Of a DNA stretch of 64,000 bases, positions 3,768 to 64,000 are shown piece after piece. The notes below the pieces were generated by a model. It was not told the origin of the DNA. It saw only the letters and a list, made by a program, of their open reading frames with translations, and did not search any database. The first letter of the stretch is position 1, and each line of letters starts with the position of its first letter. The DNA comes from Setoptus koraiensis (taxonomy: Eukaryota > Animalia > Arthropoda), in assembly GCA_048013815.1 (NCBI GenBank), contig CM106585.1, positions 434,001-498,000 of the forward strand, written 5' to 3'. The translations under genes were made by a program, and so were the position numbers.

Positions 3768-4179
3768 TCACGTTTTAGCGGGCGTAAACGCCATCGAATT
3801 CGATCGCTGCAATGGTTTATTATTAGCTGGTGACCAAACCGCCGAACTTGTTCGACGTAGGTATCTACTACAAACCGCCTTATTTTTGCCGAATATCTCT
3901 TCCAATCGAACCGGTATTACTGTTGGACGTGCAAATATCTTCCTAAATTGGCGGCGGTGCTCATCCGGTGTCTTCGAAAATTGCTCTGTTACGGCCGTCC
4001 TTAAATGTGGGGCGCGGGCCCAAACAGCAACCTGCAGATTTTTCTTTGAGGACGTAGCATCGATGGTGTCTCTAGTGTTATCTTCATCGGCTATACTGAT
4101 GCTGATATTGTTACGGTCTAACTCGTTAGCGACACAAGCCGGTTCGTCTTTTCTAAAAGTACTGTTTTGTATTTTCTGT

Positions 4180-4214
<35 letters not shown>

Positions 4215-41377: not shown

Positions 41378-41958
41378 GGCCAGCAGCATATGATTCTAAC
41401 TACTGATAGCAATTTTGTTTCTGATTGGAGGCTTTAGATAGTTTAAATCTCCGTCAGAAAAGAGATCTGGTTTACAAATGCATGAATTTAAAGTTCTCGT
41501 CTGACTGTCTGATTAGGGCGAAGCAGTAGACCGACGACCACGCAAGGGCTTTACGTACATGATGTGTTATAAAAGCGTGCACTATGCGCACACATGTTAA
41601 CAGAAGTAAGGAGTTAGAGAGCGTAGATAGCGAACAAAGAAAAAGTTTGCACAGAAATGCGCCTATAGCGAGCGTCATCATAAAGCGTTGGGTGCAAGTG
41701 CGTTAGTTCAGGGTAGATGCACTAGTGTGTTTATCTACTGACCGACACTGCCTTACGTGAATGATTGGAGTGCTGTAAACGTCCATGGTGTCATATAAAT
41801 ATTGTCTTGAATGCGCACAACACCGCACACAAAGTTGCACGCTCAGACGTCGCATTGTGTGTTACTGTCGACTGTTGTGCATTCAACTATAGTAGTACAG
41901 ACGGTTCAACGTGTTCTAGTGTTTTGGATGAATACTTTCATACTTTTGCCACTGTATA

Positions 41959-42663
41959 AAGGATGTGTTGCATTTTGGGTCGATTTTGAAAATTTTTGCT
42001 GTGGGTATCTATCGTTGGAGGTATGATAGAGCACCCCGAGTGGCGCCCATCGGGCCGGCCCGCGCACTGGAACCACCTTGCGGTCGGGCGTTACCGCGGT
42101 TTTAGTATTTTTTTTTTGTTTGGGGCCCCACTTCGCATAGAAAGATAGGATCGGCGGAGATGTGACTATGCTCATTGTGTAGAGCGACTCCCAACCGACA
42201 AAATGAGCGAAAAAAATGTTGAAAAAACAACGGAGGTCGGTGTGAAAAACCGCAAGACCCGAGCCCCCTCCCCTGACCGCGCATAGGAGATGTGCAGATT
42301 TCGTCCGCTCATTGGCTGCTCTATTTGCATTTCTCCTATGCGCGGTCAGGGGAGGGGGCTCGGGTCTTGCGGTTTTTCACACCGACCTCCGTTGTTTTTT
42401 CAACATTTTTTTCGCTCATTTTGTCGGTTGGGAGTCGCTCTACACAATGAGCATAGTCACATCTCCGCCGATCCTATCTTTCTATGCGAAGTGGGGCCCC
42501 AAACAAAAAAAAAATACTAAAACCGCGGTAACGCCCGACCGCAAGGTGGTTCCAGTGCGCGGGCCGGCCCGATGGGCGCCACTCGGGGTGCTCTATCATA
42601 CCTCCAACGATAGATACCCACAGCAAAAATTTTCAAAATCGACCCAAAATGCAACACATCCTT
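41959..42663. mobile_element. 705-bp foldback/MITE-like palindromic element (332-bp perfect terminal inverted repeats, 41-bp spacer)
   Basis: 41959-42290 is the exact reverse complement of 42332-42663 by base-by-base reading. The arms are ~51% GC (171/332 by hand count) against AT-richer flanks. No transposase and no clean target-site duplication, so the TE assignment is inference. Confidence 0.65.
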
Positions 42664-42944
42664 GCTATCATACTGTCATCATATTTAAATAATTTAAAAT
42701 TAATTTATTGTCAACTATAATTATTGTACCAAATAGAACAACAAGTTGATTCAGATTCAATTATTGTCATTGAATTGACACAAAACAATCTAACTAAAAA
42801 TTACATCGACCTATTGAAAGGAATAGATCGCAAGTGTGCTGTTGAACAGTCACCATGGGACGACATTCATTGTTGATTAACGACTCAAACAAAAGCATGT
42901 CATTCCTTGCTAGATTGCATGTAGACCTCAATAAATTATTTGGC

Positions 42945-44798
42945 ATGCAAAATGTAATATTATTATTATTACTAGTCAGTCTAGTTCAATATTCGAGTCA
43001 ACAAGAAGCAGCGGCAGCAGTAAAGGAACCATCAAGTGATGACGACAGCCTAAAAGTGACGCCTTCATCAAGCGACGAACAATTGGATGGTGCTGCAGCA
43101 GCTAATAAAGAAGCCGATTATGTTAGCCCCGTCGTTGATAGATATCATTTTTTTGAACATTTTGATGACTCGCTCAAATTCGACGCCAGATGGATAAAGT
43201 CGTCAGATCCTAAATACAGTGGTCAATGGAAACTCGATTCTAGCAAAGAGCTACAAACACAGGCCGATCTACAATTAATATTGGCCACCAAGGCCAACCA
43301 TCATGCTATATCAACCAAATTGGACAAACCGTTTGTATTTGGCAAACAAAAACAATTACAAAAACCTCTTGTTGTACAATACGAGGTTCAGTTTAGAGAG
43401 GGCCTTGACTGTGGTGGCGCATACATGAAGTTGCTAAGAGCGCCATCGAACGATCTCAGTCAACTCAACGATAAGACGCCCTACTCTATTATGTTTGGCC
43501 CGGACAAATGTGGTGGCGACAACAAGCTACATTTTATTGTCAACTATAAGAATCCTGTTACCAAGAAATATGAGGAGAAACATTGGAAATTAAACAAACA
43601 CAACAGCATGATTCAGGTGTTCTCAGACAAACGACCGCATTTCTTCCGTTTGGTTCTGCAGCCGAACGATCTGTTTGAATTGTATGTCGACGACAAACAA
43701 ATAGCCACTGGTTCATTGCTCGAAGACATGGAACCCGCCATCAATCCGCCTAAAGAAATTGTTGACGAAAACGACAAAAAACCGCTAGATTGGGACGAAA
43801 GGCCTAAAATTGAAGATCCAGATGCCAAGAAGCCCGACGATTGGGACGAGGAGGCGCCACGCAAAATAGCCGATCCAACGGCTCAAAAACCTAGCGATTG
43901 GCTAGAGGATGAACCAAAAATGATAGCCGACCCAGAGGCCGTCAAACCCAGCGATTGGGAAACTGAAATGGACGGCGAATGGGAAGCACCTGTCATCGAT
44001 AATCCAGCTTGCAAGACTGCCAAAGGTTGTGGTCCTTGGACGGCACCACTCATTGATAATCCAAATTACAAAGGCAAATGGCGAGCGCCCATGATTGACA
44101 ATCCTGCCTACAAAGGAATCTGGTCACCAAGAATGATACCCAACCCAGATTATTTCCATGACGAAAATCCTTTCAAATCTCTTGATACAATTGATGCAGC
44201 ATCCTTTGAATTGTGGTCCATGTCCGAAATGATAGCATTCGACAACATTCTTATTACTGACGATCTAGATACGGGCAAATTCTTGCAACGTACCACTTGG
44301 CAATTGAAGAAAATAGAGGCCGATGCTTCGTCGCCATCCATCGTCACCAAGTTCTTATCATATACCCAACAATATCCATGGCTATGGGCCGTTTGCGTGC
44401 TGGCCGTTGGTTTGCCGTTATGCCTATTTATAGCTTTCTGCTGCACTGGCAAGAAAACTTCTTCTGAGAGCACCGAACGCATCGCTGCCAATAAAAAAGA
44501 TGATGTTTCATCTCCAGATGCAATACCTGTCGAAGAAGTTAAAGAAGCCGAAGATGACGAGGAGGATGACGAAGAGAAGGAGTTACGACAGAGATATATG
44601 GATAGTGAGTCTGATGATGAATCTAACAAAAATCAACAACAAACTGATGACGAAGAAGACGATGTCGCAGATGATGATGAGGAGGATGAAGAAGAAAAAG
44701 AGGAGGCCTCAGAGGAAGATAGTAAAAAGGTTGCGGGTGATGATGTAAATTCGAAACAGCCTTCAAAGAGGCAAACTCGAAGGAGCAAACGAAATTGA
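42945..44798 (+). CDS. CANX: Calnexin, single exon
   Basis: Signal peptide from Met 42945 (the ORF opens at 42855). Lectin domain with VVQYEVQF..GLDCGGAYMKLL and YSIMFGPDKCG, P-domain repeats (KPDDWDEEAP, KPSDWLEDEP, GEWEAP, GKWRAPMIDNPAYKGIWSPR), a TM helix, an acidic tail and a basic C-terminus (RQTRRSKRN). Confidence 0.97.
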   Translation: MQNVILLLLLVSLVQYSSQQEAAAAVKEPSSDDDSLKVTPSSSDEQLDGAAAANKEADYVSPVVDRYHFFEHFDDSLKFDARWIKSSDPKYSGQWKLDSSKELQTQADLQLILATKANHHAISTKLDKPFVFGKQKQLQKPLVVQYEVQFREGLDCGGAYMKLLRAPSNDLSQLNDKTPYSIMFGPDKCGGDNKLHFIVNYKNPVTKKYEEKHWKLNKHNSMIQVFSDKRPHFFRLVLQPNDLFELYVDDKQIATGSLLEDMEPAINPPKEIVDENDKKPLDWDERPKIEDPDAKKPDDWDEEAPRKIADPTAQKPSDWLEDEPKMIADPEAVKPSDWETEMDGEWEAPVIDNPACKTAKGCGPWTAPLIDNPNYKGKWRAPMIDNPAYKGIWSPRMIPNPDYFHDENPFKSLDTIDAASFELWSMSEMIAFDNILITDDLDTGKFLQRTTWQLKKIEADASSPSIVTKFLSYTQQYPWLWAVCVLAVGLPLCLFIAFCCTGKKTSSESTERIAANKKDDVSSPDAIPVEEVKEAEDDEEDDEEKELRQRYMDSESDDESNKNQQQTDDEEDDVADDDEEDEEEKEEASEEDSKKVAGDDVNSKQPSKRQTRRSKRN

Positions 44799-45321
44799 TA
44801 GTTTTATTTATGATCATTCGTACTCACACATCTAATCGTATATACATATATATATATATATATATATTGTAATAGATATTTAATCTAGCCAGTACTAATT
44901 TCCTCGCTTCATTAGCTCTACTATTAAGCATTCGATTCGTGAAGCTAGAAGATCCCTGTCAAGGATATAATGTGATGTGAACTATTTGCGCAGACATCGA
45001 CCTCATGCACAATTTGTTTTTCTATCACAACAGAAAGCCCATAGTTTTATATTTTAGACTAAAAAAAAAAAAAATAGTTGAGTTGGAAAAGCAGGAATGT
45101 TTATGGCGTAGACCCATATGAAACAGAAATAAAGAATCTATAGTGGTGAAACAAATTTTCATGAAAAAATGTTATTATATTTTAGCTTTGCTTACAGCTC
45201 GTTTTAGAAATTGATCAGAATCTTCTTATTCAATATCAGGATTTTCTACAAATGCTTTCGAGACAGTTCCATTCTGCCCAACACGACGCATCATGTAGTT
45301 ATGATTGCGACAAACAAATAC

Positions 45322-48300
45322 TCAGAAGGCTAGACATTTCAATGAGTTGTATCTTGGCCCATTCAAAAGCCAATAAGTAAGCATTTCACCCTTACCCTTA
45401 ACTTGGACAAGTCCTCGCTTAATAATTACATAAGCTGTTCTTGTGGCTGCTACTGTTGAATTTTCAACTCTATAACTGCTGCTAGGCGATGCTTGCAAAT
45501 GATGAATACTATCGAATTGATTTACAAAAAACTCGCTGGCTTCAAGTAAGGTGTCCCTGAATTGTCCAGTGAGATGAACCTTTTGTGGTAGACCTGTTGA
45601 TTGCATTCTGGAGGCAATATTAATTGTATCACCAAAGAGTGAATATTTTGGTTGTTCACGCGAACCAACTAAACCAGCACAAACAGGGCCGCAATGTAGG
45701 CCGCATCGCAGTGTCAAATGGTAGTCTGGCAGATGTTTAATAGTATACTTTTTGGCTTCATCCAATAGGTCTAGCGCTAACGAGGCCAATAGACAGACGT
45801 GCTTTAGGCCATTACGTAACGGCACTCCAGATGCCAACATTAGACAGTCGCCAATTGTTTCTACTTTGTATATATTATCATACTGATTGATAATTGTATC
45901 AAAGGCACTATAGAGATCATTCAAAAACTCGATAGCCTGTATGGGGGTGCTAATGGAGCTTAATCGAGTAAAGTCAACAATATCAACAAACAATACACTT
46001 ACACATTCGAATAATTCGGCCTCGATTGGTTGATCAAGGCACAACTTTTTTGCTATAACTGGTGGCAACATTTTGTTCAGTAATCTATTTGCGCGTGCTT
46101 TCTCCAGTTGCAATTGTTCAGTTCGTTCATCAATAATTAACTCTAGATTATTTGTGTAGATATCCATTAAATATAGCATATTGTCCATGAGATGATTACT
46201 ATCGTTGCCCCTAGAGTTATTGGCAAGAGTAATGGTATTGCTGTCCAAATCATGGCTACGAACCATGTTTGTTCCGTTCGTTGTTGAATTAATATTTGAC
46301 ACCTTGTGGACCTTGTTAGCTCTATAGTCTAATACGGGCGCCATCATTTGTCGTATTTGACCTATTGATAGAGGCCTCTGGCTTGGCTGTGCCGACCAGC
46401 ACCACCTGATGATTTGAGTTCCAAGCTCAAACAGTAATTCATAGGTTATGTAGCATCCCATAGCTTTGATAGTTTGTGCAGTAGTTTCCGATTGTTTGAC
46501 GCTTGCACCCGTGGCAATAGAATCCGTTTTGTTTGATATTGGTTGATGATGATTCTGACACAGTTCACCAGCTTTAGATCCGACAGATTGCCTCATGTTC
46601 AACGTTGACTGATGACCACCATACCAACGATTACCTATTTTGTCTAGTGGTGGTCGGAAATTGTTTCCTGTTCCACCAATAGTTAGCAGAACCTCTACTA
46701 TATATTTGTGCCTACCGTCTTCATTTGTGAGGCTGACTAGTTCAATTTCACCAAATCGTTGCATGTTGCCTGTCAGTGGGGCGTTCTCAAAATAGCAAGA
46801 CCAAGGCTCTTTACATGTCAGCAATTCGTACAAGACAAAACCCAACGAATACATGTCGCCCATTCTGCCACGTTCACATTTTTTCCTGTAGTCAGTTTTC
46901 ATTAAACTGTCTAATTCAAGATCATTCGATTTAGTTGCTGTATGACGATCCTTTGGCATGGCGTTATCTTTTATTTCCACTATATCTGCAAGCAGTTCTG
47001 GAGCCAGATAGATATATTTCTCATAATTAACTCGGTCAGGTATAAACGGTGAACGATTGACATGTTCGGTAGTTAACGTTGATCGACTCTCGCCTTGGGT
47101 ATGATTGTCGGCGCTACTTGTGATATTCTGAATGTAACCTGATAAATTCAGAGTATTATTTATGTGTGTCTGGTAGAAATCAGTCAACTTGAGTGTCCAT
47201 CTACTATCGACAAGACAGTTCGTTGCCTTGAGATTTCCATGATAACCTATGGAGGGCAAGTTTGCATGGATATAATCAAGACCTCGCAACAAATCATTCA
47301 TTAATGATATCACAATAAATATGCTCAATGATGAGCTTAGATTTTGCCCAGAGAGAACGTCCCTAAGGCTTCCTCTTGAGGTATGGTCAACTAAAATAAA
47401 ACAATCAATTACTGGCCATCTACCTTGGTCGTCTGAATTGTCTTCAACAAAGCAAAGAGGCTCCTTCTTCTTCTTCTTCTTCTGATCACCATTTGTACCT
47501 GATGTAGATTCGTTCTGTTTTTGACATTTCTTGGTGCATTTTATTTTGCTGTCGCCATCAAAATTACAGGTCGCTAATTGATTAAAGTCATAGGCCAACC
47601 CTATCATAGGTAAAACGTTTGCGTGCCGAATTTGTCTCAGTGTCGACAGTAAATTGTTGATCTGATTGTTTAGCTGCATGAAATTTTTACTATGTGCAAC
47701 AAATGGCATTGTTGTTGTTGTTTTCTGGAGAATTTCCTCCTCTTGGTCGACTTGATAATTCTGCTTTCGTTGATGTGGGGACAATTTCATATCCTTGGCC
47801 ATCATTTGAATAGATTCATAATGTCTCTTGGCGTGATGATGGCCGTCCCGGTAGCCGAGTGTTTTTGATAGATTTGAGCGAAGCTTAACACATTCTGATG
47901 CTAACGACACCAATCCAGACAGCAACGACCGCGACCAACCAGCCGAATATTTCGAGGTTGACGATTTAACAATTCTCTCATCTTGTTTGGCTCTTTTTCT
48001 TGTAAGATCAAATCGCAACTTGATTAATTGCTCCAAATAATAATGCCAGTTGTCATGAGATGTTAGAAGATTGTTGCCATGAGACAGTTCAGGTTGGAAT
48101 TTTTTACATGCAACTAGATTCTCTTTGAGCAGGGCCAATTTAAAGATAGTTTGATCGCCGTTGGCGACATCTTTGGTTGCTGCATTATACTTGTCACTAT
48201 TGTCATTCAAATTTGTTTTATTTCTATTAGCTGCTGCATGGATATTGTCGTTGATCGGACGGAGATCGCGACGCAAACTTAACAATACCTCGCTGGCCAC

Positions 48301-50722
48301 GAAAATGCTACACTGTTCGAGTCTGTTGTATGATTTGAGTTGCTTGCGATACCTGTAATATGCAAAAGCTAATAATGTAACAAACAGTAGTAAGATTACA
48401 AAAGACAACCAAATTGCAATCTTCCGCAGACGCTGTTGATCCATGAGAACCTGATTAAATACTGCACTGGACGTTAGATTACGACAATTGATCTCAATTT
48501 GTTTCGTGCAAATTCTCAATTGAGGTCTATTCAATTTGGGGGCACCATTAGTGAGCAATTCCAATTCAGTATGCAGAACTAATTGTGGAAGCTTCAATTT
48601 GTTACTAGTGTTCGAGCTAGTAGAATAAACAAAAACGCCTACCGGTAGGAGGCCGTTTGAATGGTGTTGGCCATGAGAATATTGCGATTCAGTCAGATTA
48701 TCAAAATCTTGGTCTTGCTTTACGGTCGTGTTGGTGCGTTCGCTAGGTGAATGCAACATTCTTCTGGCAACCAAAGTATAATTGCCTTCAGCATCGCCGT
48801 TTGAATCAATGCGACCTACAAAACCCATCGAGCTGTTGTAAATTTGTTTGCGTAATTGTTGGCTCAGTCTGTTGCCATTTAAACAATGATCCAACGATGC
48901 ATTCTTTCTCTCAATCAAACATTCTTTAAAAACTTGACCGTATAACATGATGGCGTCGAATAGATAATATGCCTCGACCGGCAACCGAATCAGCTTAGGC
49001 GAAGTTACCGGTAGCGTTGATCCATCTATAAATCCGATGCCCATCGGTGTGCTATTGCTACTGACAACAGATGTCTTCGACATGTGTACACTATGCAATT
49101 TATTGGACCGCATAAATTGCTCAATCATTTGGTCCATTTCATCGGTAATAGGAGCTGATGGAAATATTCCAACATAATATTCGAATGCTCTCTGTATCAG
49201 CTGATAGGCGTCATCACTAAATAAACCTCTGAAGTATCTCGAAGAATCGCTCGGATCATAGTGTTCGATATCGACACCTATTACCAGATATTTGGTCTCA
49301 TTCATTGTGTTTGTTCTGCTGCCAGCTAGTATATCTCCATCGCCAACTGATGAGCTATTGTTTCTATATTGCTCATCAAGCGCCAACATGAGACCAAGGT
49401 GCTCAAAGTAGTGACCAACAACTATATAGATACGACCTTTAAATAAGCTTTGTTTCACTAGTTCTTTGAAAGGATTCGCCGAATAGCCATGGTGGTAGGT
49501 TTTGTTCCAGGTGCCTATATGGGCAAACGCATTGCTTGTTTCTAGATTTTGCTCATTCAAATAATCTATCAATTGTTTCTCAATGGACAATGCTATAAGT
49601 TTGAATTCTTGCTGTTGCGATTGGGATTCCATGTCAATCAATGAGCTGGTTGCATGATGATGATACAAAAGAATGAGATCTTGAAGCCATTCGAAATGTT
49701 TCAGAGTGGCAACAACCGAACTGGATATTTTAGTATGAGGCGGCTTGGTGCGACTGAATGTTGGATAGAGCCTCTTGTTGGAAACGGCTGAATGGGAACA
49801 GAACTAAAAGCGATGAATGAGATGCGATTGAGTTTAGTATCTAGAATTGGTGCAAACATCATCTACCAGATATCACAATGATCGAGTGAGATTAACCTAC
49901 ATGGGAAATCATTGGCTTGTTGTAGATTGCTGCCAACTTGGCCTCAGTAATACACGTTTCCTGGGGTCCAATAACTACCGATACATTTTGGTGCAGCATC
50001 AGATCAACACTTCCTCTGATACCTTGATTGGGGGAAAAATGATCATCATACTGGGCTAATCAAGACAGTATCTGTTTGGATTATCTGGTGTTTGATATTG
50101 GGGCTGGCACTTACTCTCGCTTTCTTGTCCATATGTTTCCACTACAATTGGCTCAAAATGCACTGGCGTCGTCGACAGTGATTGCACAATTGACAAGTTC
50201 ACATTATTGAGCTTATTCATGGCCAATTGAAATACGTTTTCTAATTGTCTACCGGGCCTATTGTAATGATGATCATTCTTATATCTTTTAGCTCCTGTTA
50301 TGTAACCAACCTTAAGTATGATTCTCTGTGCTTGTGTCTTACAATGCAAATGATGAGATGGGAACGATAGTTTTTTTTGTAGCCTAGCAGTTCTTTCACC
50401 TATTAGATCTAGTATAGTTCACCATTGAATGATAGCGTTTTTTCGAGACTGCTAATGGTTTGCGACTCACCTGCAAATTGTCACTATCATGTGATGCTGG
50501 CTGCTTTTGTTGTTGGTAACTAAGTGACAACTTGATACCATCATTGAATCTTGCTAGTTGAGATCGTGTCATTCGGAGACTGGAATGAGAGGTCTCGTTG
50601 GGGAGTGTCAATTGGGATGGGCGAGTTGCATGAGTGAGTAAAACTAAACTTGAGCAGAACAGAAAAGATGCAAATGCCACTCTGATGATTCTTCTTTGAT
50701 ACACTAGACGTTGTGGCGCCAT
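45322..50722 (-). CDS. Receptor-type guanylate cyclase (ANF-receptor ectodomain, TM, kinase-homology domain, cyclase domain), ~1692 aa, 4 exons
   Basis: Hand-spliced minus-strand exons 50471-50722 (signal peptide), 50115-50337 (LKVGYITG..RPG..VVETYG), 49901-50022 (VIGPQETCITEAKLAA..PMISH) and 45322-49803 (FC..YPTFSRTKPP.. through GNLKATNCLVDSRWTLKLTDF, NLELIIDERT, LFVDIVDF, KVETIGD, LFGDTINIASRM). All introns are GT..AG, 92-133 bp, and in phase. Exon 1 is the least certain. Confidence 0.92.
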
Positions 50723-53268
50723 TTATTATCAAGGTTCTCGTTATCGCACTATGAGCAGCAATCAATACTCTAATATAGATAGAATGTGTTTCAAATAAAA
50801 CTTTTGTCCTTTCGTAATCTGTGTTTGTGAATTTGGATGAATTCACTAGGATCATAACTATTCAAACAGTGTGAATCAATTGACTCACTATCGATCGGTT
50901 CCCATGATCTAATGGCGAAAGAATCTAAGTGTGCACTACCCTTTTGTGCGAAATAATAAATTAAAACTAATTAATCATCAGCTCCTCCCTAAATGCAGGT
51001 CTGGCTACCCTTTTGTTGATGTTATTGGTAGCTGAACAGTACAAAATGCTTACTAAGGATGCAGCTGCAATACAAGTTATCATCAGCTTGATCAACTAGA
51101 TTAGCATATTTACGCGTTCTCATTCAGATTCGATTAGTGCCCGAGGGTCTATCGTCACTCCGTCCATCTAGCTGTCACTACTCGACATTGCAGCATTACA
51201 AGAGATATAAAGCATATAATCAGACTGACTGCGGCAATAGCGTTTTATATATACACCAAATGCTGCTACACGAAATTTACCTTGTTTTCGTTAAAGTTCA
51301 GGCAGATCACCGACATGCCTACCAAGCGAAGGCGGTGGAAGACGAATATATGACCGCTATAGATGAGCCCTGTGCCATGATTTGAGAAGCTTGTCTCAAC
51401 ATGACGGATTTGTTTAGAACTAGATAGAAGAATATACAAGCATATCGGAACTGCCTGCGCACGTGAAATGCCGGTAATAGAGAATGTTCGCAAATAGTGG
51501 CAAAAACGCTCTTACTGTCAGTTTACTGCGAGTATATAAGAGAGAGGGCCGTCGTTAATGTTAGGCCAGATGTTTAGTGGGTTTGTATGAAGTACAAATA
51601 TATTTTTATCCTAAATTATAGTAAGTGCTGAGTTCATGAATGACCAAAAGAATTCCTTCGATGCAACAGGCTAATGTGGCAAATATCCAAATATTCCAAT
51701 GAATACAGAATGAATAATGATCACAATAGAGACGATATCTCAGCAACTGAAAATTTTATGTCTAACGGCACTTGTTCGATGAAACTTTATCCATCCTATA
51801 GTGAAAGAAGCGCGCAAGTCCCGCAGGCGAACATGGGAAAAATCTCACATCAAGATCTCTTCCCGATACTAGATAGACATCATTGCCAACAAGACTAGGC
51901 GTGTGGTTGTGATGGATGCATTTCACAAGAAACTGTAAAGCTGGATTTAGCTGGTTATTTGACTTCCGGAACAATTCAACGGCCACGATCGTAACCAACG
52001 AGAAACGAGTCAATCTGAAGAGACGTTCGCTTGTACAAAGTTTCAACGATGCTCGAGAAAAAACCACTACCTGATTATTACTTTGAGTATGTGGTGCGGA
52101 CAAATAGCTTTGATATATGGAAAAATGCGACAATTATACACAGTGTGACTGTTGTATTGTGTATACGAGTGTCGGCAACGAACATTCTGTTAGAGCGAAA
52201 TTGGGATGCACGCTTTTTGCAAGTTGAATCAAGACGCACTTTGTAATCTTTGTAAGCGCTTGGTATTTGTGTTGAGCTCTCATCGATGATATACAAATAG
52301 ATTAATGCTATTGTCAATTAGCTTCCCTGTTTGTAGCTTTCTGTAAGCATGTCAGATATGTTTTTTGCTTGTGATAGACGTCATCCAATGATGATCTGGC
52401 TACAAGCTTGACAAGTGCATTACAGTTTGTTTGTCAAATTTGTGTGCGTCTGTGTATGTGTTAACGCACTGTACATTTATGTGGAATGGCACGTATTATT
52501 ATCACTATGTAGTGTAGTATAGTAGTTAGGGGATAACAAGTGAAAGAGGGGAGGTCTTGGCTATCAGCATCTATAATGAGATACTAGTGTTTATTTATGA
52601 CAAGGCACAACAAGCAAATGTATGACTGTTTGTGTGTGAAGCTTCTAAGAATCTGTGATTGTGTATGCTTGTTGGCTTATTCGACTATTAATACATTGGT
52701 TGCGTAACGTCACACTAATACCTAATGGGTGTAACAATCAAACAACACAGTCAAGCTGCCGAAATGATTTGTGCGCTACATAGATATCCGGTGCGTGTGC
52801 AAATGAAGCTTCCTCTGGAATCATGATTTTGTTTGCCGCCTCTAATGGGCACAGTTTGTAATGGGGTCCGATGTGCGAGCTATTGGGGCACCTTGCACGT
52901 CTCTGATTCGCATAGTATTGTGTACATGTACCGTACAAACAGATTATGTAATGGCATGCTGCGTTGCTGTATTGCGCATTTTGTTGTTTGTGCGCGCGTT
53001 GCCTATCGGACAAAATGCCGTCAATTAACTTGCGCATAGAAAGTAACGCCAACAAGTCTAGTTATTTTTAACGTACCAGAGGGGGCGCTCACCCCATAGG
53101 TCTAATGAAGACCATTGCCGTCACTATTCCACCACATCACGCTATGTACGGCTATGCAGACTGCACGGGCAGACACACGAGTTATATAATAATGGCAAGC
53201 GTCCTCTTGAGAGAATTTTTTGAAGTATGCGGATCAGCAATACTTTCACATACACAAACACAAACTCG

Positions 53269-53375
53269 CACACACACACACACACACACACGCACGCACA
53301 CACACACGCACGCACACACACACACACACATACGCACGCACACAGACGCACACACAGACGCACGCACACTACACA
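53269..53375. repeat. Compound (CA)n/(CACG)n microsatellite
   Basis: Direct reading; part of a microsatellite-dense zone at 53.2-55.4 kb. Confidence 0.9.
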
Positions 53376-54407
53376 CAGACTGTTGTGAAAAATACGAACA
53401 GTATCGGTGTGTAGGATCTGTCAGTTTGATTGTTACACCCTTTATGCTTCGTCAGAAGCATTCTTCTTTGTTGCCATTGTCGCCTCTATTCACTGTCACT
53501 GTGTGTGTGTGCGTATGATAGTGAATGAGTGTGAGCGTCTCAATTGTCCATCATTAAGACATCTTCGCGTAGCTAGCTGTTTAATCACAAACACACACAC
53601 ACACACTCCGGCAATTGCTGGACATACTCACACTGACTGCTGCCCCTTCGTGTTATCATTACATAAGCTTCTTATATGCAAACAAACAAAGGGCAAGGTC
53701 GCCACGCAACTATAACACTTGTGCAAATGTCATACAGTAATAATGTATGATGATAGTATTGCCTTCGATCTATTGGTGGCTTTACTTGCTGTGAACAACT
53801 GCAACAACAACTTATCCCCGCGCCCACTGATTAAGCTTGGCGCAAGGTTCACGACGATACAAGCTCGATGGACGCTCACTGGACTGACCAGTGGAAGACC
53901 AACGCAAGTTTTTGTGCGACTGAGTTGCGTACGTGTGCAAATCTGTTTTTCTGTACCAATGGCGCATTTATGAGAGTACCTTGCTATACTATCGTCACTA
54001 TCTATCAATTGTGTGTGTGTCCACATGAGAAGCGAATCAAAAATTGAACAAGGAGCAACCAACTATTCGACTTCTTATATACGAGCTATGTTCAGCAAAG
54101 TCTGTTGTGTGAGTGTGCTTCATCGTCGTCATTCATTAGTAGTCGTAGAAAACAATGTATACTGAGAATGCGCCATCATCAAAATCATCTTTGTGTGTAT
54201 GTGTATTCTCTGTCTCTCTTACTCCCTCTACTAAATTCGCTAGTCAACTACCACAGACTGTGCAAACGGCTGCTGCTGCCGCCGCCGCTGTTGGTGCCGC
54301 AGTAGCTGCTGCAGCAGCTCCTTCTTCTTCCGTTTTTTCCATCTATTCTCTGCCGATGGCAAAGAATGGCTGCAGTTAGAAGTGATAAATTTACGAGCAG
54401 TAGTAAA

Positions 54408-54438
<31 letters not shown>

Positions 54439-56546
54439 GCGTGTCTTGTTAATAATATTGATATCAAGTTATAGTTGTGTGAAACGAGAAATATACACAA
54501 GCACACCATTGGTATATATATTAATTAAAAATGATATGATGATCTCTGTGTAACACCAACGGCCAGCTAGTCAGTTAGGCTCCTTCGATCAACATCATGG
54601 AATTGTCATTGACACATTACTATTGTAGAGTTATAGAACCATACCAGACAGAGATAATGGAAGAAGTGTGACGCGTTGATGAGGCACTACACAGATGTAG
54701 TACTATACTTTGGATGGCATGTATAGCGAATGACAGTGTTTATCAGCGGCTATATGTCTACTACTTGTCCCCCAGTTATCAATACTATTACAGTTGTAAT
54801 GCCGCCCCTCTTACGATGGCCATCGTCAATGTTCGAAAGCTGCAAATCGAATTCGCTCGCTCGCTCACTCTCATGTGTGTGTGTGTGTGCGTGTGTGTGT
54901 GTGTATGTGTGTCTTTCGCGGATTTAATGTACCGCGAAGGTAAAGCGAAGGCGAACTGTGTGTCTCTCTTGTGCTTGTGTGTGTTCTACACCACCACTAA
55001 CAATAACAGCGAGCGAATGAGTGCTTGTGTGTGTGTGGACACACACAAGTTCGCCTTTTCGTTGGCTAAATGGTGGCAGGCGCTTGATTTAGCAGCAGGG
55101 AATTGTTTACAAATAAACCACACTCATGAGTGACAGCCACTCATTTATGTACAAATACTCTCATGCAGGCTAAAGGGCAGTGTAGGATTGTTATATTCGT
55201 TGTCGTCGTCGTCGTCAGCGTCGGTGAATGGTAGGACCAACAACAGCTAACGCAGCAGCACAGCCAATAACGCAGGCTATAGCAGGCTGCAAGAATGAAC
55301 TGTAATGATTCTGCATATGATGAGTATTATGTTCTCCGGACCGTGGGTCCGTTTGTCTGTGTGTGCGTGTGTGTGTGTGTGTGCTTGTGGATAAGTGCAT
55401 CTCACAAGATACCATTGCTCGATGTGTGCGACAAAAGCACTCATAAGCAGCGAACTAAAACAGCAGCAGCAATAGAGAGGGCAAGAAGAAATCTACACAT
55501 TGGCTCTATTTTGTACACACAAGCGCACACTGATATTAGCGATGATGGTGAATGTGCGATAGTTTGGTGGTGGTGCTAGTGGTGACCGTCGACGACGACG
55601 ACGACGAATTCGAATTTATTCGCATCATCCAATACTCACAAATGCACACACTGATTTACACATCCACCAACATAGTCAGTCACACACGCACAAGCATAGG
55701 TACACAAACACACGGAGGGACACACACACAATCTCTTATTAGAATATATTACAATTATCATCATTATTGGATATAATTTAATTATTGTTATTATTATATA
55801 TTTAAATGTACACTATCTGATGATAGACCACGTAAATATTATTGGCAGAATAGTATCGATACACAACACTATTATTATTGTTATCGCTACTAAAACGACT
55901 AAATTAAGCACCACATTTTACCACCACTATCATCACTATTATTGCTATTAATATCATCAAGATAATCTACCAATTGAGATTGAGATTTTAAAATAATACA
56001 AGAACAAAGCGGACTGCAGTGAGACTGCTCAGATTGATTTTTATTAAAAGTATCAAGTAAACGGGATCGTCACATTATGGATCAACATCAACAATATTAT
56101 CATGCATTTGTCTGCCACACATTTTTGCAGTGATAATTTATTGTAAGTCAATCGACAATAATAGCATGAAAATACATTTTTTAGCTTATTGTAATTAACG
56201 CTAACACTATTATTGTTACTATAGCTCTTTATCTTTTGCGTAACAACAGTTGCCATCATTGGTAAGAGATCCTGGAACAAATTCAACGCGACAACTGGAT
56301 GCACCATGCATTGTTATTGATCGCACATTGTGGACCTGAATTCATTTAATCTAGAAGAAGAAAAAGAAAACACGAGCTCTTAGTGACCAACGATAAATAT
56401 ACATTCAAGCCTCTTGCATCATCTAATTAGTTCCAACATACTATTGTCGTTGTGTGGTAACAGTAGTCGTAACCCGTTCAAGAGAACCGCTATAACACCA
56501 TAGGTGTGCCGTCAACTCTGCAATAACTATTTCAACGAACGGCTTG

Positions 56547-59500
56547 AAAAATCAATCAACTCTTACACACAAACATCATAAAGACACACACACACACACA
56601 CACAAACAGACACACATACACATACCTTCACCTTCTCACAAGGTACCACCTGATCACAATCTACCAATAAATTTATCGAACAAGCCATCTATAATCCATC
56701 TAACAATTCATTTCTCTCAAACAACAGTTATCTCGATAACAAGAATTCATCATAACAACCCAAATATCTACCGATAGAATCCAAACACACTAAATGTGAT
56801 ACATATCACAACATCTCTTCCAAAGTATTCAATACATCACCAATAATGTCATCCCACATTTCAAACAGTCCCAAGCAAAAAATCATAAAAAAATAAATTC
56901 ATCAATATTCTATTCATTAATGAATCGACAATACATATTACTAGATTTATCAATATCAAAATAACCACATTTAAATTCTATCCAACCAACATTCAATCTC
57001 CACAATTATCTCTAACATAAAAAAACAAACCATATAGAATAACACAACAGCAGCAAAATCATCTCAAATGCGAAGTATCATTCATCATAGTGGGGGGTGA
57101 ATCAACATTAACATCGTCACCAAATTCAAACTCCAAGCATAATCAACAAATTCACACAAACATATATCTGATCAATTACATTAACATATCCCTTTATCTT
57201 ATCAATCACAAGCACATCCACACGATTCAACATACAACCAACACAACCATCCAAAAGAACCAATCAAACATTCTCATTCAATTCCCAGCTCATCTGAACA
57301 CATTTCAAATCCATAATCCATAAACAGTTTCCCATCTCGGCATTCCAATCATTAGCAAAATATCCACATTCAATTCCCACATATTTACATCACACATCAA
57401 ATCAACCATAATCATTCTGTCAATATTCATCGTCGCTATGAAAACAACAACCAACACAATACACAATTCTCAAATTAACCACATTATAACAATCATTTAC
57501 ATAAAATACAATATCACATACCCAACAGATTACACATTCCAATTCACAACATAAGATCACAATTCTGGATATAATACAACATCGAATACCATCCACCAAA
57601 CAACTTTCGAACACACATAGACAAAGTATTTTCTAAAGTCAAGCCCCATCTCACATCAACATCATCACATTTCACACACAGGATCTACAATCAGCAATCA
57701 TATTATATCATTTATCATAACTTCGACAACACATCTCATCCCAATCTATCAATCAGCAAAAAAATTCAAAAAGTCCACATCAGACATCCCACACAAGCAA
57801 GTATATCTAACATCGCGATAGTTTAATAGAGTAATAAGTCAAATCAATACAAATACACATACATTCATACCATTATTCATCTTACTAACACATCTTGTAA
57901 CAATTTCATCAAATCAATAATCACATTTCAAAACAACAACAATCTTCTGCAATAGTTTCAATACAATATTACAATCATATCAATAAAATTCATCTCTAAT
58001 AAATAAACCAACCAAAACATCACAATCATAAAATCTTATCCCCACATAACAACTCCTACAAAAATAACACAACCTTCAATCACAGTCAATTATACAAAAA
58101 TGACCAAATTCACAGGTTTATATCCCCCACTGTACATCTTTTTCATCATTCCCATCAATAACAATAGTCAAACGACATCCATTTAACATCACAACATCAA
58201 TCAAGAAAATCACTCCATCTAACATATTTAATCAGACCATCAAGATATTACATCAGTCCATCCCATAAAAATATTGAAAATGTCAACAATATATGCATAT
58301 ATAACAAAATCATCAAAAATCATATCAATTCATACATATCAACAAAATCAAACCATACATCCAGGTAGTCTTTCACGAACCCTAAAATATAATTGCCTCC
58401 ATCCCAAGATATCGAATAATAATTGCTAAACATCACTATCCATCCAATAAAACAAAAATCCCTGTATTAGCACATCAAAATTCATCACATACTATCCTCC
58501 ATCAACATATCATCTACATCTATTTACCACAAATGATCCAAATTTCAAAAATAAACATCTCAAATTCTCCAACATACAAATACAATTAACCATTCATCAT
58601 AATTACAATAAACAAATCAAAATAAGTCCTAACACACCATCCATTACATAATCACATCAAACCATCAATTATCCAACAATATCATTAATATTAATCACAA
58701 AATTCATCATCATCTTATCATAAATCCTAGCACACATTTGCATTAATTTCCAGCAAAAAATTCCAATATCTCCATTCCAAACCATAAAATATATATCCAC
58801 ATTGCAATCCGACGAGATAATTCATAGTCCATAAACATCACGATACACATAATCATATCACAATCTCCATCACATTAATCATCAGCACACAGCATCATTA
58901 TATATACAACTAATTCGATCACAAACAAGCAAAAACACAATATTCCAAACAGATTCCCTAATCTCATCCATCCGATGCAACAATCGAAAGATAAGTCTAT
59001 CCAGAAACATTCCTCCCCATTATTCCAATAAAATTCAATCACAGTTCCATTGATCACAACATCATCATCAATTTGACAACCATTCCCCAAGAATTATTAT
59101 ACCCCCAAAATATCACATAATTTTCATCCCCTATACTTTGTTAATTCATCTCCACAAAATTATTCATTATCAATACAATAATCTATAGAATACCATTACA
59201 AACGTTCAATCATCCTCAAGACAACAAATGCATCATATAATCCACTCAAAAAACCATCATCCCCTACATATCGGAAATTATCACATCAATAAACATCTCC
59301 AATATAATAACATCTCAAACAATCAACAGATCCAAATACAATCGATCTCCAATAACATCGCAATTTACACCATCTAGCATAAACACATACCACAATTACA
59401 ACTCAATACACCACATATATCGCCCAATATAATCTCCAATTACATCAATCCTCCATACACACATACACAACACAAAAACATTTCCAATTAATCAAATACA

Positions 59501-62500
59501 TGTTGATCCATAATCCAATTTACATCAAGCCAAAATAATAAAACCAGAAAAAAATCTACCAATATCCATCAATAAAAACATCGCATATACCAAATCCATC
59601 AAATCCTCCAGATGCCAATTCCATCCATCTATAGACAATCACATATAACAATTCGAATTCACACATAGAAATCACAATTCGATTATCCAATCACCAAAGA
59701 TTACACATAATACAATCAACACACAATCCAAAATCCTATCCAAATCATCATCCATAAAAAGAATACTCCATCACACCACAATCAAAAATCACTTTCCAAA
59801 CATACAATCTAACCAACAACATACTACACCAATCATATAAATTGCTATACAACTTCTAATATAAACATTAATCCAACAGTAACAAAAAATTATCGACAAA
59901 AATATCTTGATAATCTCACATATCTCTCCACCATTCACACAAAAATCAAACAAACCATCCAAATAAAACAAAATACACATATTTTCATCACACTGTAAAC
60001 AGTCATCCCATTTCCTCAAACACATAAAATAAAATCACACATTGCTCAATCAAAAACAATAAAAGTCATTACCAATCATATCAACAAAAACCTTATCTCC
60101 ATCATATCAAAATTCCATCATTCCTCAGATCACAAAATATAGCAAAACCATCATACAAAGCTCATACAAAATTCAACGACAATCCCCTTTCACAAAGACA
60201 CCATCCCACTACCAATGATACAAGACTCCACAGGAGGACAATCTAAAGATCAATTCTAACAAATCAACCAAACATAAAATCAACATTCCTAAAATAAGAT
60301 CATTAACATTACCATCTATAACATTTCCGCAACAATACTCATCAATTACCACATCCGAAGCTGCATAATCGCACATGCCATGCAAAGTCCAACACAGATC
60401 ACACATCACATCCATCCAATCCAATATCAATATCTCCAACAATATTCAAAATCAAAAAAGCATAAAAAAAAAACAACAAAAATTAAGCACAAAACATGAA
60501 TCGAACCATATATCTAAACAAACAACATCACCATAATCTCAATTAATGATTACATACACAATTCTCAATCCACAATCATACATCGAGTCCTCATCCCAAC
60601 CAATAACGCTTAACACCAATAATTATTAATTGCACACACATTCCCAATTCATAACCATCTTTTCAAAAATTCTCCATACCAATCATCATAAACATACAAA
60701 TATCAAGAATACATATAATATAATCCAACCAATCATTTCAAACAATCACATCCATCCTAAGCATCAAACAAACATCCATCATCAAAACACACAAAAATAT
60801 CATACATCAATACATTACTACACTCATCATCAGCATATCACACCATCATTTTATTATCAAAAATCCAAAATCACGTCCCTAAAAAAAATTCCCATATATC
60901 AAACCGAATAATCCTTAAACTTACCACTAAATCATTCTTATAAATCGAAAAGCTCACCATAAATAACAACATTCAAATTCCCCAAATCATCAATTCAAGA
61001 AAAGCATAGTGTTTAAAATACAATTCCGTATCAGTCTTCCGAATATCATATCATGAATCCATTATCAGTATTCTACCACATCATCACAGGAACTTCGTAA
61101 ATTCCAGCACATAAGCTACATAATGTAAATACAATTCATTACACATCACAATGCAATACCACCAACACAAGCATCATGACATCTCGTACCTTCCAACATT
61201 CTGCAATAAACCAATACATCAATAAAAAAGGTCAAAATATAAAACATTTCAATCATCGTCCATTCGCTAAATATCAAAATTCTCTACAAATTGATTCACA
61301 ATTCACATGAACATCCAATTACAAATCCCCCAATCTATATATATCTTTCTCTTATACATCATCCCCATATATACCACACACAATCCTGTTCCATCTCAGA
61401 TGTAAAAACATTTACTTCATAATCTACTATATTGTACCATCACACAATCATAATTTATTTCATCATTCTTTTCACAGATCTCAGCAAGCACATCACAACC
61501 AGCGATAGCGAACATGTAATAATCTACATCATAGACAATCTCAATGTACAACAAAAACGAATCTAAAGATCATCCTCCCAATCGCAATAAGATGATCTTA
61601 AGCATACACATCACACATCCATCTCACAAGTCAAGCATAATAATACAAAACAATTCGCCACCATGCGACAACATCATTCTTATCCACCCAAAAAATCATA
61701 GATCAAACATAAATCATCTTAATCGCACAAATTCACAGTCTAGACACAAAATACGAAACATCATTATTGAAACATCATCAACAAGATCAAGCCAGATCAT
61801 AATCGCAATCTCACACAAATAAATCCAATCATTCTATATGTCAACAACAAAATCATCTGTTCTCACATCAATATCTCATGCATCAAAACATATCTAATAA
61901 CATTCTACATTCCATCAGCTTTCAACACATCCATAAAGAAATACCCAATCGCAACATCCTTCTACATCTCTAATCCACATTCTAAAATCAAATGAATCTT
62001 CAAAACATCTAATTTTCCCTTTAAATGTACAAATCTCTACACAAAATACAAATTCATCAATATATCCATCCAAATTTCATTCATCCTCACTTCTTCGCTT
62101 TCTAAACTTCCAAACAGCAACACAATCAATCTTCCAATGTATTTTAACATCTCCAAGCATCTCGTTCATAGATAATACTCAATAAACAAACAAGGCCTCA
62201 ACAACATACACATAACAATCCAAAATAATCTTCACACAATGACATATATATATCACATCACACAAACACATGTTCTCGTTTCAGAATTGTCCGCTTGTCC
62301 AGGCAATCTCTTTTATCAATCAATGAGCTACATAAACACATTACAAAAATTCACACAACATCCACTCACACATAATCACAATATCAAGATCAACACAACA
62401 CCAGAAGACCCACCAAAAAAATCAAACAATCAATCAATCAACTTTCATCCATACCTTACAGCATCATATATCATACATCCAAAATAAATTCCATCTCTCA

Positions 62501-64000
62501 TAACCAAATACATATATTTTCAATCCAAAACATCTTTTGCCAGGAACATTCAACCCACCATCAGATAAACATATCAATCCACTTGATAATAACCAATAAC
62601 ATATAATATGATTCATACATAGTACATCACAGAACACAACATCCATCATCATAATCTAAACAGCATAATATATTCCTACCAACATCACCACAATATCACA
62701 TAACAAAAAGGACGTCGATATCCAACAATTAATTCCTTAGCACATCAAATCCACATCAAACCTTTTGTCTTATTCCCCATTAAAGAAACAAATAACACAC
62801 AAACAAAACCACATCATATCCATTCATCCAACAAAATCATCTCATATCAAAGCATCAAAAAACACATCAGACAACCCAAATCAAAACCAATCATCAAACA
62901 TCATCAAAAATTATCAGATTCAAAAAATCGCAGCACAATCTCTTATAAATAATTTCTACATTTCTGTTCAAAAAAAATATTCTCGATCTCAACCATTTTT
63001 TCTAACATCTACAATCACAAACAAATACAACATCTCATAATCTATACAGAATCCCCTACACGAAAAAAACAATATATAAAGATCAAACTCACCAACACAG
63101 TAATTTCATTTCTACCATACAGACATTCATCCACAACCACAAATCACATTACAAAAACAATGTTAGCAATATTTCCAATCCAAAAAAAACATCAGCTTAA
63201 TCTCCAATTAAGCATAATCCCAAGATAAAATCCTAAATTTCACATAATCAATCTTCAAAATCAAATTAAAAACACACAATCGCACATCACACAACCAGCA
63301 TTCTCAATCCTCATAATCACAAAAATCAATCATAAATAAAATCCACCATTCCAATCTGGCCTACATTCCATCCTCATCAACCAATTAAAAGCCACCAGCC
63401 CCAATAGTCCAAAACAACAATACATCACACTCAATACCATTTTACACAAATCCTTATCCGCATTCATCTTACAAATCCAAAACATCCACATCTAATTCCC
63501 GACATACACCAACATTCCACCACAACATCTAGCCTCATAATAAATCAAATGCAAACATGTAGTTCTTAGATTCGATTCAATCTCCATTATTAACACTAAC
63601 ATCGACACATAACGAAAATATTATTTTTCTCAGTTTATGCAAATAAAAATCACATATTCCTCCCGCCAAAAATATATTATTACATATATCTCATTCTCTC
63701 ATTAAACTCCCATATATCAAAAATCTCCACATCAAGAATCCAAAACACACCACCAACACATCACACATAACCATACAAACAAAAAAAATTATTTCATCCC
63801 ATCAATATAAAATTCATCCCCATCGTCCATATACCCAATCCAATCATCCATATCCACATATCCTCACAAACCAATCTCCTCAAAACAATCTATCCATCCT
63901 CTTATCAACACATTTCAATCATTTCGCATCATCAATTCAGCACAAGTTAACAGTCATCTACTCATTAAACACAATAATCAAAATCTACAAGAAATCAATC
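56547..64000. other. Strand-asymmetric G-depleted, A/C-rich non-coding tract extending to the window end
   Basis: Hand count of seven sampled 60-nt lines (420 nt): A188, C111, T103, G18. The onset is abrupt after ggcttg at ~56546. No ORF reaches 100 aa and I saw no clear tandem unit. Confidence 0.9.
56584..56625. repeat. (CA)n microsatellite at the start of the G-poor tract
   Basis: Direct reading: acacacacacacacacacacaaacagacacacatacacatac. Confidence 0.9.

What the first reader, a model, noticed from the sequence alone, without database searches (positions are those of the whole stretch)
56547..64000. 7.4-kb tract with near-total loss of G on the + strand, starting abruptly
Seen: sampled composition is ~45% A, 26% C, 25% T, 4% G (GC skew about -0.7), whereas the preceding 56 kb has balanced G and C. 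There is no long ORF or obvious repeat unit. TC and ATC are over-used and CT is under-used: in 57721-58200 I counted ~17 CT vs ~31 expected, and 4 RCT vs ~15 expected. Inference: relative to the host, G loss with A gain plus T loss with C gain equals C->T and A->G on the minus strand, the deamination signature of long-lived single-stranded DNA or of a deaminase acting on one strand. A+G is ~49% and C is close to T, so it could also be ~50% GC foreign DNA with ~80% G->A conversion. A low-quality long-read or unpolished contig-end artefact is at least as likely as real biology.
Basis: partly seen in the sequence, partly recalled or inferred. Interest (0 to 1): 0.8.

Follow-up and report, generated by a model that had tools for sequence, protein, structure and literature searches.

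The report
Structureless G-poor tail on mite contig
The last 7.4 kb of this mite genome window really is almost free of G on one strand, but it behaves statistically like random letters rather than like any evolved or edited DNA, so it is most probably non-genomic sequence joined on during sequencing or assembly, not a deamination scar.

Summary
Positions 56547-64000 are A 43 %, C 27 %, T 25 %, G 4.7 %. The change point is exactly 56546|56547, and the tract runs to the last base of the window. The host is an intron-poor eriophyoid-type mite, not human.

The deamination reading fails. G->A editing cannot change C/T dinucleotides, yet TC/CT is 3.0 against 0.92-1.27 in host windows. No transition can change the purine/pyrimidine pattern, yet in that alphabet the tract has no structure at all, while five host controls do. 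There is also:
- no codon periodicity
- no context bias of the surviving G
- no internal repeat
- no Pfam domain
- no relative for the longest ORF among 5.8 billion proteins
- no template in the bacterial, metagenome or viral collections

The tract is a stationary Markov source of order 1-2, so it was "born random".

My best explanation (confidence about 0.55) is technical. A junk or random long-read tail, or a template-independent amplification product, was joined at an (AC)n microsatellite and never polished. The rivals are real untemplated synthesis in vivo, a mutational-equilibrium tract, and an odd telomere. The telomere has the wrong polarity and no motif. Read-level evidence is needed to decide.

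The parts
56547..64000 (.). G-poor, statistically structureless tract. The + strand is A/C/T and the - strand is T/G/A. It runs to the end of the window.
   Evidence: Composition and skew. Change point. Order-1/2 Markov behaviour, no heterogeneity, no long-lag correlation. No structure in the RY alphabet. No period 3. No self-repeats and no match to the rest of the window.
56565..56622 (.). (AC)n microsatellite at the very start of the tract. It is probably the last piece of genuine host sequence and the site of the join.
   Evidence: TRF period 2, 28.5 copies. I estimated by hand from the tract's transition frequencies that a perfect (AC)10 has a probability of about 1e-5 under the tract's own Markov model. 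Similar (AC)n/(TG)n arrays lie at 53233-53369, 54407-54447, 54873-54916 and 55351-55389 in the host flank.
49669..56546 (.). Non-coding, microsatellite-rich host flank between the receptor guanylate cyclase gene and the tract.
   Evidence: No period-3 signal and no Pfam hits for its ORFs. The ORFs read through dinucleotide repeats. It has ordinary natural-DNA statistics. It is alignable to the relative's contig L001 only up to 50360, plus a patch at 52228-52449.
57092..57097 (+). Isolated run of six G inside the G-poor tract. It is unexplained.
   Evidence: Read. All other G runs are of length 1 (314) or 2 (16). By my hand estimate, the probability is about 3e-4 under the tract's first-order model.

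Best explanation
The tract is not mite DNA that was edited. It is sequence that never had a natural template, that is, "born random". Most probably it is non-genomic material attached to the real locus during data production. Two routes are plausible: the junk or random part of a chimeric long read carried into a contig end, or a template-independent amplification product ligated or chimerised to a genomic fragment. The join lies at or next to the (AC)n microsatellite at 56565-56622, where spurious overlaps and template switches are easy. Because no genuine reads map to such sequence, polishing leaves it unchanged.

Shown: the tract is a stationary source of order 1-2 with no natural-DNA structure in the 4-letter, 3-letter or RY alphabets. 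It starts abruptly, is unique in the window and has no relatives.

Inferred: the technical origin and the route by which it was attached.
For: - Cross-validated bits per base are 1.744, 1.675, 1.671 and 1.684 for Markov orders 0-3, so nothing is gained beyond order 2.
- Block entropies for K=3-7 equal first-order simulations (z -0.3 to -0.8). Host controls give z -1.7 to -10.7 at K=4-7 (at K=3 they do not differ from their own simulations).
- Composition in 200-bp windows is as uniform as simulation (z -2.0 to 2.4; host mostly 2-9, two of twenty values lower). None of lags 3-40 is correlated, against 5-16 of 38 in the host controls.
- Tandem-repeat yield is the same as in simulations. A-run lengths are close to geometric.
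- In the RY alphabet there is no structure at all.
- The onset is abrupt at 56546|56547 and the tract continues to the last base of the window.
- No similarity was found to the rest of the window, to phage or plasmid records, or to 5.8 billion proteins. No Pfam domain was found.
- The rest of the window is accurate, with intact ORFs up to 1448 aa. It is collinear with an independent contig of a relative only up to about 52.4 kb, so nothing independent vouches for the tract.
- Random, junk and chimeric reads are recognised classes in long-read data (PMC6966772).
- Multiple displacement amplification (MDA), a whole-genome amplification method for minute samples, makes abundant template-independent DNA (PMC2663774).
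- The recent eriophyoid assemblies I read about are long-read or amplification based.
Against: - There is no read-level evidence. I do not know the source assembly, its technology, or whether base 64000 is near a contig end.
- I know of no documented instrument or amplification artefact with this exact signature: A>C~T>>G with the cyclic preference A->T->C->A and a four-fold deficit of RCT.
- If the assembly comes from multi-pass consensus reads or short reads, random instrument noise could not survive. The tract would then have to be a physical molecule.
- The gene-poor, microsatellite-rich flank is also what one expects near an unusual chromosomal region.
Confidence: 0.55

Rival explanations
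1. The tract is real chromosomal DNA made in vivo without a template. A terminal-transferase-like or reverse-transcriptase-like polymerase extended a broken end at the (AC)n repeat, base by base. It had a strong bias against G and a dependence on the last one or two bases added. The product was then made double-stranded and fixed.
For: A first-order Markov chain with skewed composition is what stepwise untemplated addition predicts. Enzymes that make long random-sequence DNA exist in bacteria: AbiK, Abi-P2 and DRT4 (PMC3177184, PMC9508834, PMC12783706). The tract starts abruptly at a microsatellite.
Against: No eukaryotic enzyme is known to add kilobases of untemplated DNA to a chromosome. AbiK products show only a modest A bias and use all four bases. 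No polymerase or RT gene lies in the window. Keeping 7.4+ kb of functionless DNA in one of the most streamlined animal genomes is unexpected. No relative or second copy is known.
Confidence: 0.12
2. The tract is real chromosomal DNA at the equilibrium of an extremely strand-asymmetric mutation process. The minus strand would be chronically single-stranded, through an R-loop, transcription or one-way replication, and would suffer C->T and A->G. This is as in animal mitochondrial heavy strands, but far stronger. It is the reader's first model in its long-term form.
For: The direction of both skews fits: the minus strand is G+T rich, 70 %. Composition is uniform over 7.4 kb, as an equilibrium would be. 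From my own knowledge, not tested here: neutral sites of vertebrate mtDNA light strands have a similar order A>C>T>>G.
Against: Transitions alone cannot erase the purine/pyrimidine pattern of the ancestor, yet no RY structure is left. Transversions would also have had to saturate. Over that much time, slippage and indels should have produced microsatellites and patchiness, and none is seen beyond chance. There is no gradient, only a step within a few bases. Independent site-wise conversion of host-like DNA cannot reach TC/CT of 3.0 or an RCT deficit of four-fold. Nuclear skews of this size are not known to me.
Confidence: 0.1
3. The tract is a foreign or transposable sequence of ~50 % GC, integrated here after ~80 % G->A hypermutation by a cytidine deaminase acting on its minus strand.
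For: A+G is 48 % and C is about equal to T, so single-base composition alone is compatible. The tract starts abruptly, as an insertion would.
Against: - C/T dinucleotides are untouched by G->A, yet they are far outside natural ranges.
- Neither the G/A-merged view (z -1.0 at K=7; host -2.9 to -4.5) nor the RY view shows natural structure.
- There is no period-3 signal, although simulated conversion of host genes leaves it at 3.6-8.7 against a background of 0.65.
- There are no domains.
- The surviving G's have no context preference.
- There are no terminal or internal repeats.
- No template was found for A->R degenerate 32-mers in the bacterial/archaeal, metagenome and viral collections.
Confidence: 0.04
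4. The tract is an unusual or miscalled telomere or subtelomere of this mite.
For: A published eriophyoid telomere-to-telomere assembly has 7-17 kb low-complexity ends, A/C-rich at 5' ends and G/T-rich at 3' ends (PMC11879100). The flank here is gene-poor.
Against: - Polarity is wrong. At a right-hand end the written strand must be the G/T-rich one, and here it is the A/C-rich one.
- CCAAA occurs 37 times against 37.6 expected, and the 11-mer unit occurs 0 times.
- Coverage by the paper's telomere expression equals simulation.
- There is no periodicity at any lag.
- 25 % T and 5 % G sit on the supposed C-strand.
Confidence: 0.04

Closest known systems
Junk, random or chimeric long reads carried into contig ends
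   Same: Abrupt switch from good sequence to sequence that matches nothing. No repeat, gene or compositional structure. Such sequence is untouched by polishing. Placement is at the edge of what I can see.
   Different: No read depth or quality data are available here. I know of no published composition profile of such junk that matches A>C~T>>G with a TC>>CT bias.
Template-independent DNA amplification in multiple displacement amplification (MDA) of minute samples
   Same: It yields physical DNA without a genomic template that can chimerise with real fragments. It is relevant because eriophyoid mites yield very little DNA.
   Different: It is not known whether the source sample was amplified. 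Primer-derived products are usually thought to be repetitive, and this tract is not.
Untemplated DNA synthesis by AbiK, Abi-P2 and DRT reverse-transcriptase-like polymerases, or by terminal transferase
   Same: Long random-sequence products. A short-memory (Markov) statistic is expected.
   Different: These are bacterial defence enzymes whose single-stranded, protein-linked products are not integrated into chromosomes. Only a modest A bias is reported. No such gene lies nearby.
APOBEC/AID-type G->A hypermutation of retroelements and viruses
   Same: Strand-specific loss of G with gain of A over kilobases.
   Different: There is no deaminase sequence context, no coding remnant and no template. 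The features that editing cannot alter (C/T dinucleotides, RY pattern) are themselves unnatural.
Strand-asymmetric deamination composition of animal mitochondrial DNA
   Same: One strand is A/C-rich and G-poor, and the other is G/T-rich.
   Different: There are no mitochondrial genes, tRNAs or codon periodicity. The profile is flat, not a gradient. The tract is joined to nuclear genes, and the skew is much stronger.
Eriophyoid mite telomeres (TTTGG / TTTGGTGTTGG arrays)
   Same: Kilobase-scale ends with A/C against G/T strand asymmetry in the same group of mites.
   Different: Opposite polarity, no motif enrichment, no periodicity, and a quarter of the bases are T on the A/C-rich strand.

Membership tests
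Deaminase (APOBEC/AID-like) G->A hypermutated element | Surviving G's are concentrated in the enzyme's disfavoured dinucleotide context | tested here: not met
   The neighbours of the 352 surviving G's follow base composition, and their spacing is Poisson-like.
Deaminase (APOBEC/AID-like) G->A hypermutated element | An unedited template or paralogue is recognisable once G and A are merged | tested here: inconclusive
   None was found in the other 56.5 kb of the window. None was found with seven scans of five A->R degenerate 32-mers in the bacterial/archaeal, metagenome and viral collections. The rest of the mite genome could not be searched.
Deaminase (APOBEC/AID-like) G->A hypermutated element | Features that editing cannot change (C/T dinucleotides, purine/pyrimidine pattern, codon periodicity) remain natural | tested here: not met
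   TC/CT is 3.02 against 0.92-1.27. RY structure is absent. Period-3 power is 0.35 against a shuffle mean of 0.65.
Mitochondrial-type strand-asymmetric deamination | One strand is A/C-rich and G-poor | tested here: met
   A .432, C .268, T .254, G .047.
Mitochondrial-type strand-asymmetric deamination | Skew grades with exposure, and mitochondrial genes or tRNAs are present | tested here: not met
   The composition profile is flat with a step boundary. There are no tRNAs, no long ORFs and no period 3.
Eriophyoid telomere array | Tandem TTTGG / TTTGGTGTTGG units (CCAAA on the other strand) | tested here: not met
   CCAAA occurs 37 times against 37.6 expected. The 11-mer occurs 0 times. Coverage by the telomere expression is 0.63 %, against 0.58 % in simulations.
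Eriophyoid telomere array | The G/T-rich strand runs 5'->3' toward the chromosome end | tested here: not met
   The strand running 5'->3' to the right-hand edge is the A/C-rich one.
Eriophyoid telomere array | Lies at the physical end of a chromosome | not testable with these tools
   The window ends inside the tract, and the source contig is not available.
Junk/random long-read sequence at a contig end | No similarity to any other sequence | tested here: met
   Searches were all negative.
Junk/random long-read sequence at a contig end | Lacks the higher-order structure of evolved DNA | tested here: met
   each with host controls that do show structure.
Junk/random long-read sequence at a contig end | Single-read or zero independent read support, located at a contig end | not testable with these tools
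   No reads and no contig coordinates are available. The tract does reach the last base of the window.
Template-independent polymerase product (in vitro or in vivo) | Short-memory statistics with composition set by nucleotide preference | tested here: met
   The best Markov order is 1-2. The sequence is stationary.
Template-independent polymerase product (in vitro or in vivo) | A responsible enzyme or amplification step in the locus or in the sample's history | not testable with these tools
   No polymerase or RT domain was found among the window's long ORFs. The sample history is unknown.

The most novel reading that the evidence does not exclude
The tract is genuine mite chromosomal DNA that was synthesised without a template, or was otherwise randomised completely, and then fixed. 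That would make it a kilobase-scale, nearly G-free, statistically random insertion at a microsatellite in one of the smallest animal genomes. It would imply an in vivo untemplated DNA-synthesis or end-healing activity not described in animals.
Probability: 0.15. Interest if true: 0.85.

Novelty: not a real feature. Interest (0 to 1): 0.3.

Why it matters
If it is technical, the value is practical. A public mite assembly carries at least 7.4 kb of non-genomic sequence that standard screens missed. The tests used here are a cheap way to tell "edited natural DNA" from "never-templated sequence" without reads: C/T-dinucleotide and purine/pyrimidine invariants, Markov-order estimation, and stationarity measured against host controls. 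If read evidence shows that the tract is real, it would be without precedent in an animal nuclear genome. It would point to untemplated DNA synthesis or an extreme strand-specific mutational regime.

Tried and rejected
- **Host-derived copy.** Plain, G/A-merged and RY comparisons of the tract with both strands of the other 56.5 kb gave only (AC)n low-complexity hits. The longest shared RY word is 28, against 28-32 in simulations.
- **Internal repeats or satellite.** There are no self-hits. TRF yield equals Markov simulations. There is no spectral peak.
- **Coding or mitochondrial origin.** No period 3, no ORF of 100 aa or more, no tRNA, no Rfam family. No Pfam hit reached its cut-off for the ten longest ORFs; one Baculo_p47 hit at E 0.023, below its cut-off, is chance.
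- **Relatives of the tract.** The longest ORF found nothing among 5.8 billion proteins. blastn against phages and plasmids found nothing.
- **Template search.** Five different 32-mers with A written as R were run in seven scans of the genome, metagenome and viral collections, with 0 hits. Sensitivity is limited to near-identical templates, and no eukaryotic genomes were covered.
- **Telomere.** Motif counts and polarity are against it.
- **Orthologous locus.** The only syntenic relative is the Logan contig L001 from SRR33593474. It stops about 3.8 kb short of the tract. More distant mite contigs are not syntenic. The flank holds no conserved gene that would let me walk further.
- **Source assembly.** The window's own proteins are not in the protein collection: the look-up failed and the best calnexin hit is 89 %. 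I could not learn the sequencing technology or the contig end.
- **AbiK composition.** I remembered AbiK products as strongly G-poor. The paper does not support this.
- **Bit-level file corruption.** I considered this only on paper. Simple bit-masking models do not reproduce the base frequencies.

I did not use the exhaustive protein search or the third word search, because nothing rested on them.

Full report
**Setting.** The first 56.5 kb of the window is ordinary, gene-dense animal DNA with long uninterrupted ORFs:
- a bicarbonate transporter (791-3244)
- tubulin cofactor C
- a COE transcription factor
- prolyl 4-hydroxylase (38322-40262)
- calnexin (42855-44798)
- a receptor guanylate cyclase (45322-49668, minus strand)

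The calnexin's best named relatives are eriophyoid mites, Fragariocoptes setiger at 59 % and Aceria tosichella at 54 %. An unnamed Logan protein is 89 % identical. Its 10.4-kb contig, L001 from SRR33593474, carries calnexin and the cyclase in the same order. It aligns to window 41591-52449 at about 78 % nucleotide identity. The host is therefore an intron-poor eriophyoid-type mite. It is not human, and nothing virus-like was found. No Rfam family or tRNA lies in the window.

**The observation.** It holds in every detail. The tract 56547-64000 is A .432, C .268, G .047, T .254, against .297/.200/.202/.301 before it. GC skew is -0.59 to -0.77 per kb. A likelihood-ratio change-point analysis places the switch at 56546|56547. 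The tract scores 1692 bits as a unit, and nothing else in the window exceeds 26 bits. The tract runs to the last base. Over the whole tract TC/CT is 3.0 and RCT is 58 against 242 expected. The three over-used dinucleotides (AT 1.38, TC 1.60, CA 1.45) and the three under-used ones (TA 0.72, CT 0.53, AC 0.79) form a cycle A->T->C->A.

**What the tract is not.**
- It has no internal repeats. Apart from (AC)n, it has no similarity to either strand of the rest of the window in the plain, G/A-merged or purine/pyrimidine alphabets.
- It has no codon periodicity. Period-3 power is 0.35 against a shuffle mean of 0.65, and host genes give 6.6-13.8. After a simulated 80 % G->A change of those host genes the signal is still 3.6-8.7. 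That simulation was a statistic only, and nothing from it was kept.
- Its ten longest ORFs have no Pfam domain.
- Its longest ORF has no relative among 5.8 billion proteins.
- blastn finds nothing in phage or plasmid records.
- The telomere units published for an eriophyoid mite are not enriched, and the strand polarity is the reverse of a right-hand telomere.

**The key result.** The tract behaves as a stationary Markov source of order 1-2.
- Cross-validated coding cost is 1.744, 1.675, 1.671 and 1.684 bits per base for orders 0-3.
- Block entropies up to 7-mers equal first-order simulations (z about -0.8 at K=7). Host segments, coding or not, fall below their own simulations from 4-mers upward, reaching z -3.1 to -10.7 at K=7.
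- Composition in 200-bp windows is as even as in simulations. Most host-control values exceed their simulations by 2-9 standard deviations.
- No lag from 3 to 40 shows autocorrelation, against 5-16 significant lags in each host control.
- Tandem-repeat yield equals simulation, and A-run lengths are close to geometric.

**Why this rejects the deamination readings.** G->A changes cannot touch C/T dinucleotides. The template would therefore already have had TC three times as common as CT. Host windows on either strand range from 0.92 to 1.27. More generally, deaminations on either strand are transitions, and transitions leave the purine/pyrimidine pattern intact. In that alphabet the tract is still structureless (entropy z +0.5, no heterogeneity, no lag correlation). 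All five host controls show structure, with z from -1.8 to -18. The surviving G's carry no neighbour preference. A long-term mutational equilibrium would need transversions to saturate as well. It should also have bred microsatellites and patchiness, and these are absent. A->R degenerate 32-mers from five places found no template in the bacterial/archaeal, metagenome or viral collections. That search is insensitive to diverged templates and does not cover eukaryotic genomes.

**What it most likely is.** The tract was "born random", either as noise or as untemplated synthesis. The start of the tract holds an (AC)n microsatellite (56565-56622). It is of the kind scattered through the adjacent 6.9-kb non-coding flank. 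It is far too regular for the tract's own statistics. Genuine host sequence therefore probably runs into this repeat and the foreign part begins in or just after it. Microsatellites are classic sites for spurious read overlaps and template switching.

I favour a technical origin, with confidence about 0.55:
- One route is a chimeric long read whose junk or random part was carried into a contig end and could not be polished. Such read classes are recognised (PMC6966772).
- The other route is a template-independent amplification product from a low-input preparation (PMC2663774).
- The eriophyoid assemblies I could read about use nanopore, PacBio continuous long reads (CLR), or PCR-amplified HiFi libraries. 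One older assembly used 454 reads.

I could not identify the source assembly, and its proteins are not in the collection. The technical origin is therefore an inference by elimination. I know of no published artefact with this exact base and neighbour signature.

**Rivals.**
- Real untemplated synthesis in vivo fits the Markov statistics. Bacterial precedents exist in AbiK, Abi-P2 and DRT4. There is no animal precedent and no nearby enzyme gene.
- A mutational-equilibrium tract fits the skew direction, but it fails the RY, stationarity and step-boundary tests.
- G->A hypermutation of a foreign element is essentially refuted.
- A telomere is contradicted by polarity and motifs.

**Unexplained.** I cannot explain the cyclic neighbour bias with the four-fold RCT deficit. 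I also cannot explain a lone run of six G at 57092-57097.

Noticed in passing
window 49669-56546: A 6.9-kb stretch without coding signal in an otherwise gene-dense window. It is rich in (AC)n/(TG)n microsatellites, at 53233-53369, 54407-54447, 54873-54916 and 55351-55389. Only one patch, 52228-52449, is conserved with the relative's contig (72 % to L001 9903-10112).
   Followed up: partly
window 41591-52449 and L001 1-10378: Calnexin and the receptor guanylate cyclase are collinear with a Logan contig from SRR33593474, at about 78 % nucleotide and 89 % calnexin identity. More distant mite contigs (L002, L003, L005) do not share this gene order.
   Followed up: yes
window 3768-5483 (minus strand): A 571-aa ORF with 18 % glutamine and no Pfam domain. 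It underlies the strong AT skew (-0.5) of 4001-5000.
   Followed up: no
window 31563-34238 (minus strand) and 9033-9947 (plus strand): Two Ser/Thr-rich ORFs of 891 aa and 304 aa without any Pfam domain. They may be lineage-specific secreted or mucin-like proteins.
   Followed up: no
window 11630-12958: The COE transcription factor ORF matches only the last third of the COE DNA-binding domain (profile positions 166-230) plus the HLH. The first part of the gene must therefore lie in an upstream exon, perhaps the ORF at 11119-11592.
   Followed up: no
window 57092-57097: A run of six G inside the G-poor tract. Every other G run there has length 1 or 2.
   Followed up: partly
L002 (ENA ERZ27241733) and L003 (JGI 3300010395): Contigs of 45-75 kb in environmental metagenome assemblies carry intron-poor mite-like genes, with calnexin 58 % identical to the window's. 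Small mites are evidently assembled as by-catch in such data.
   Followed up: no
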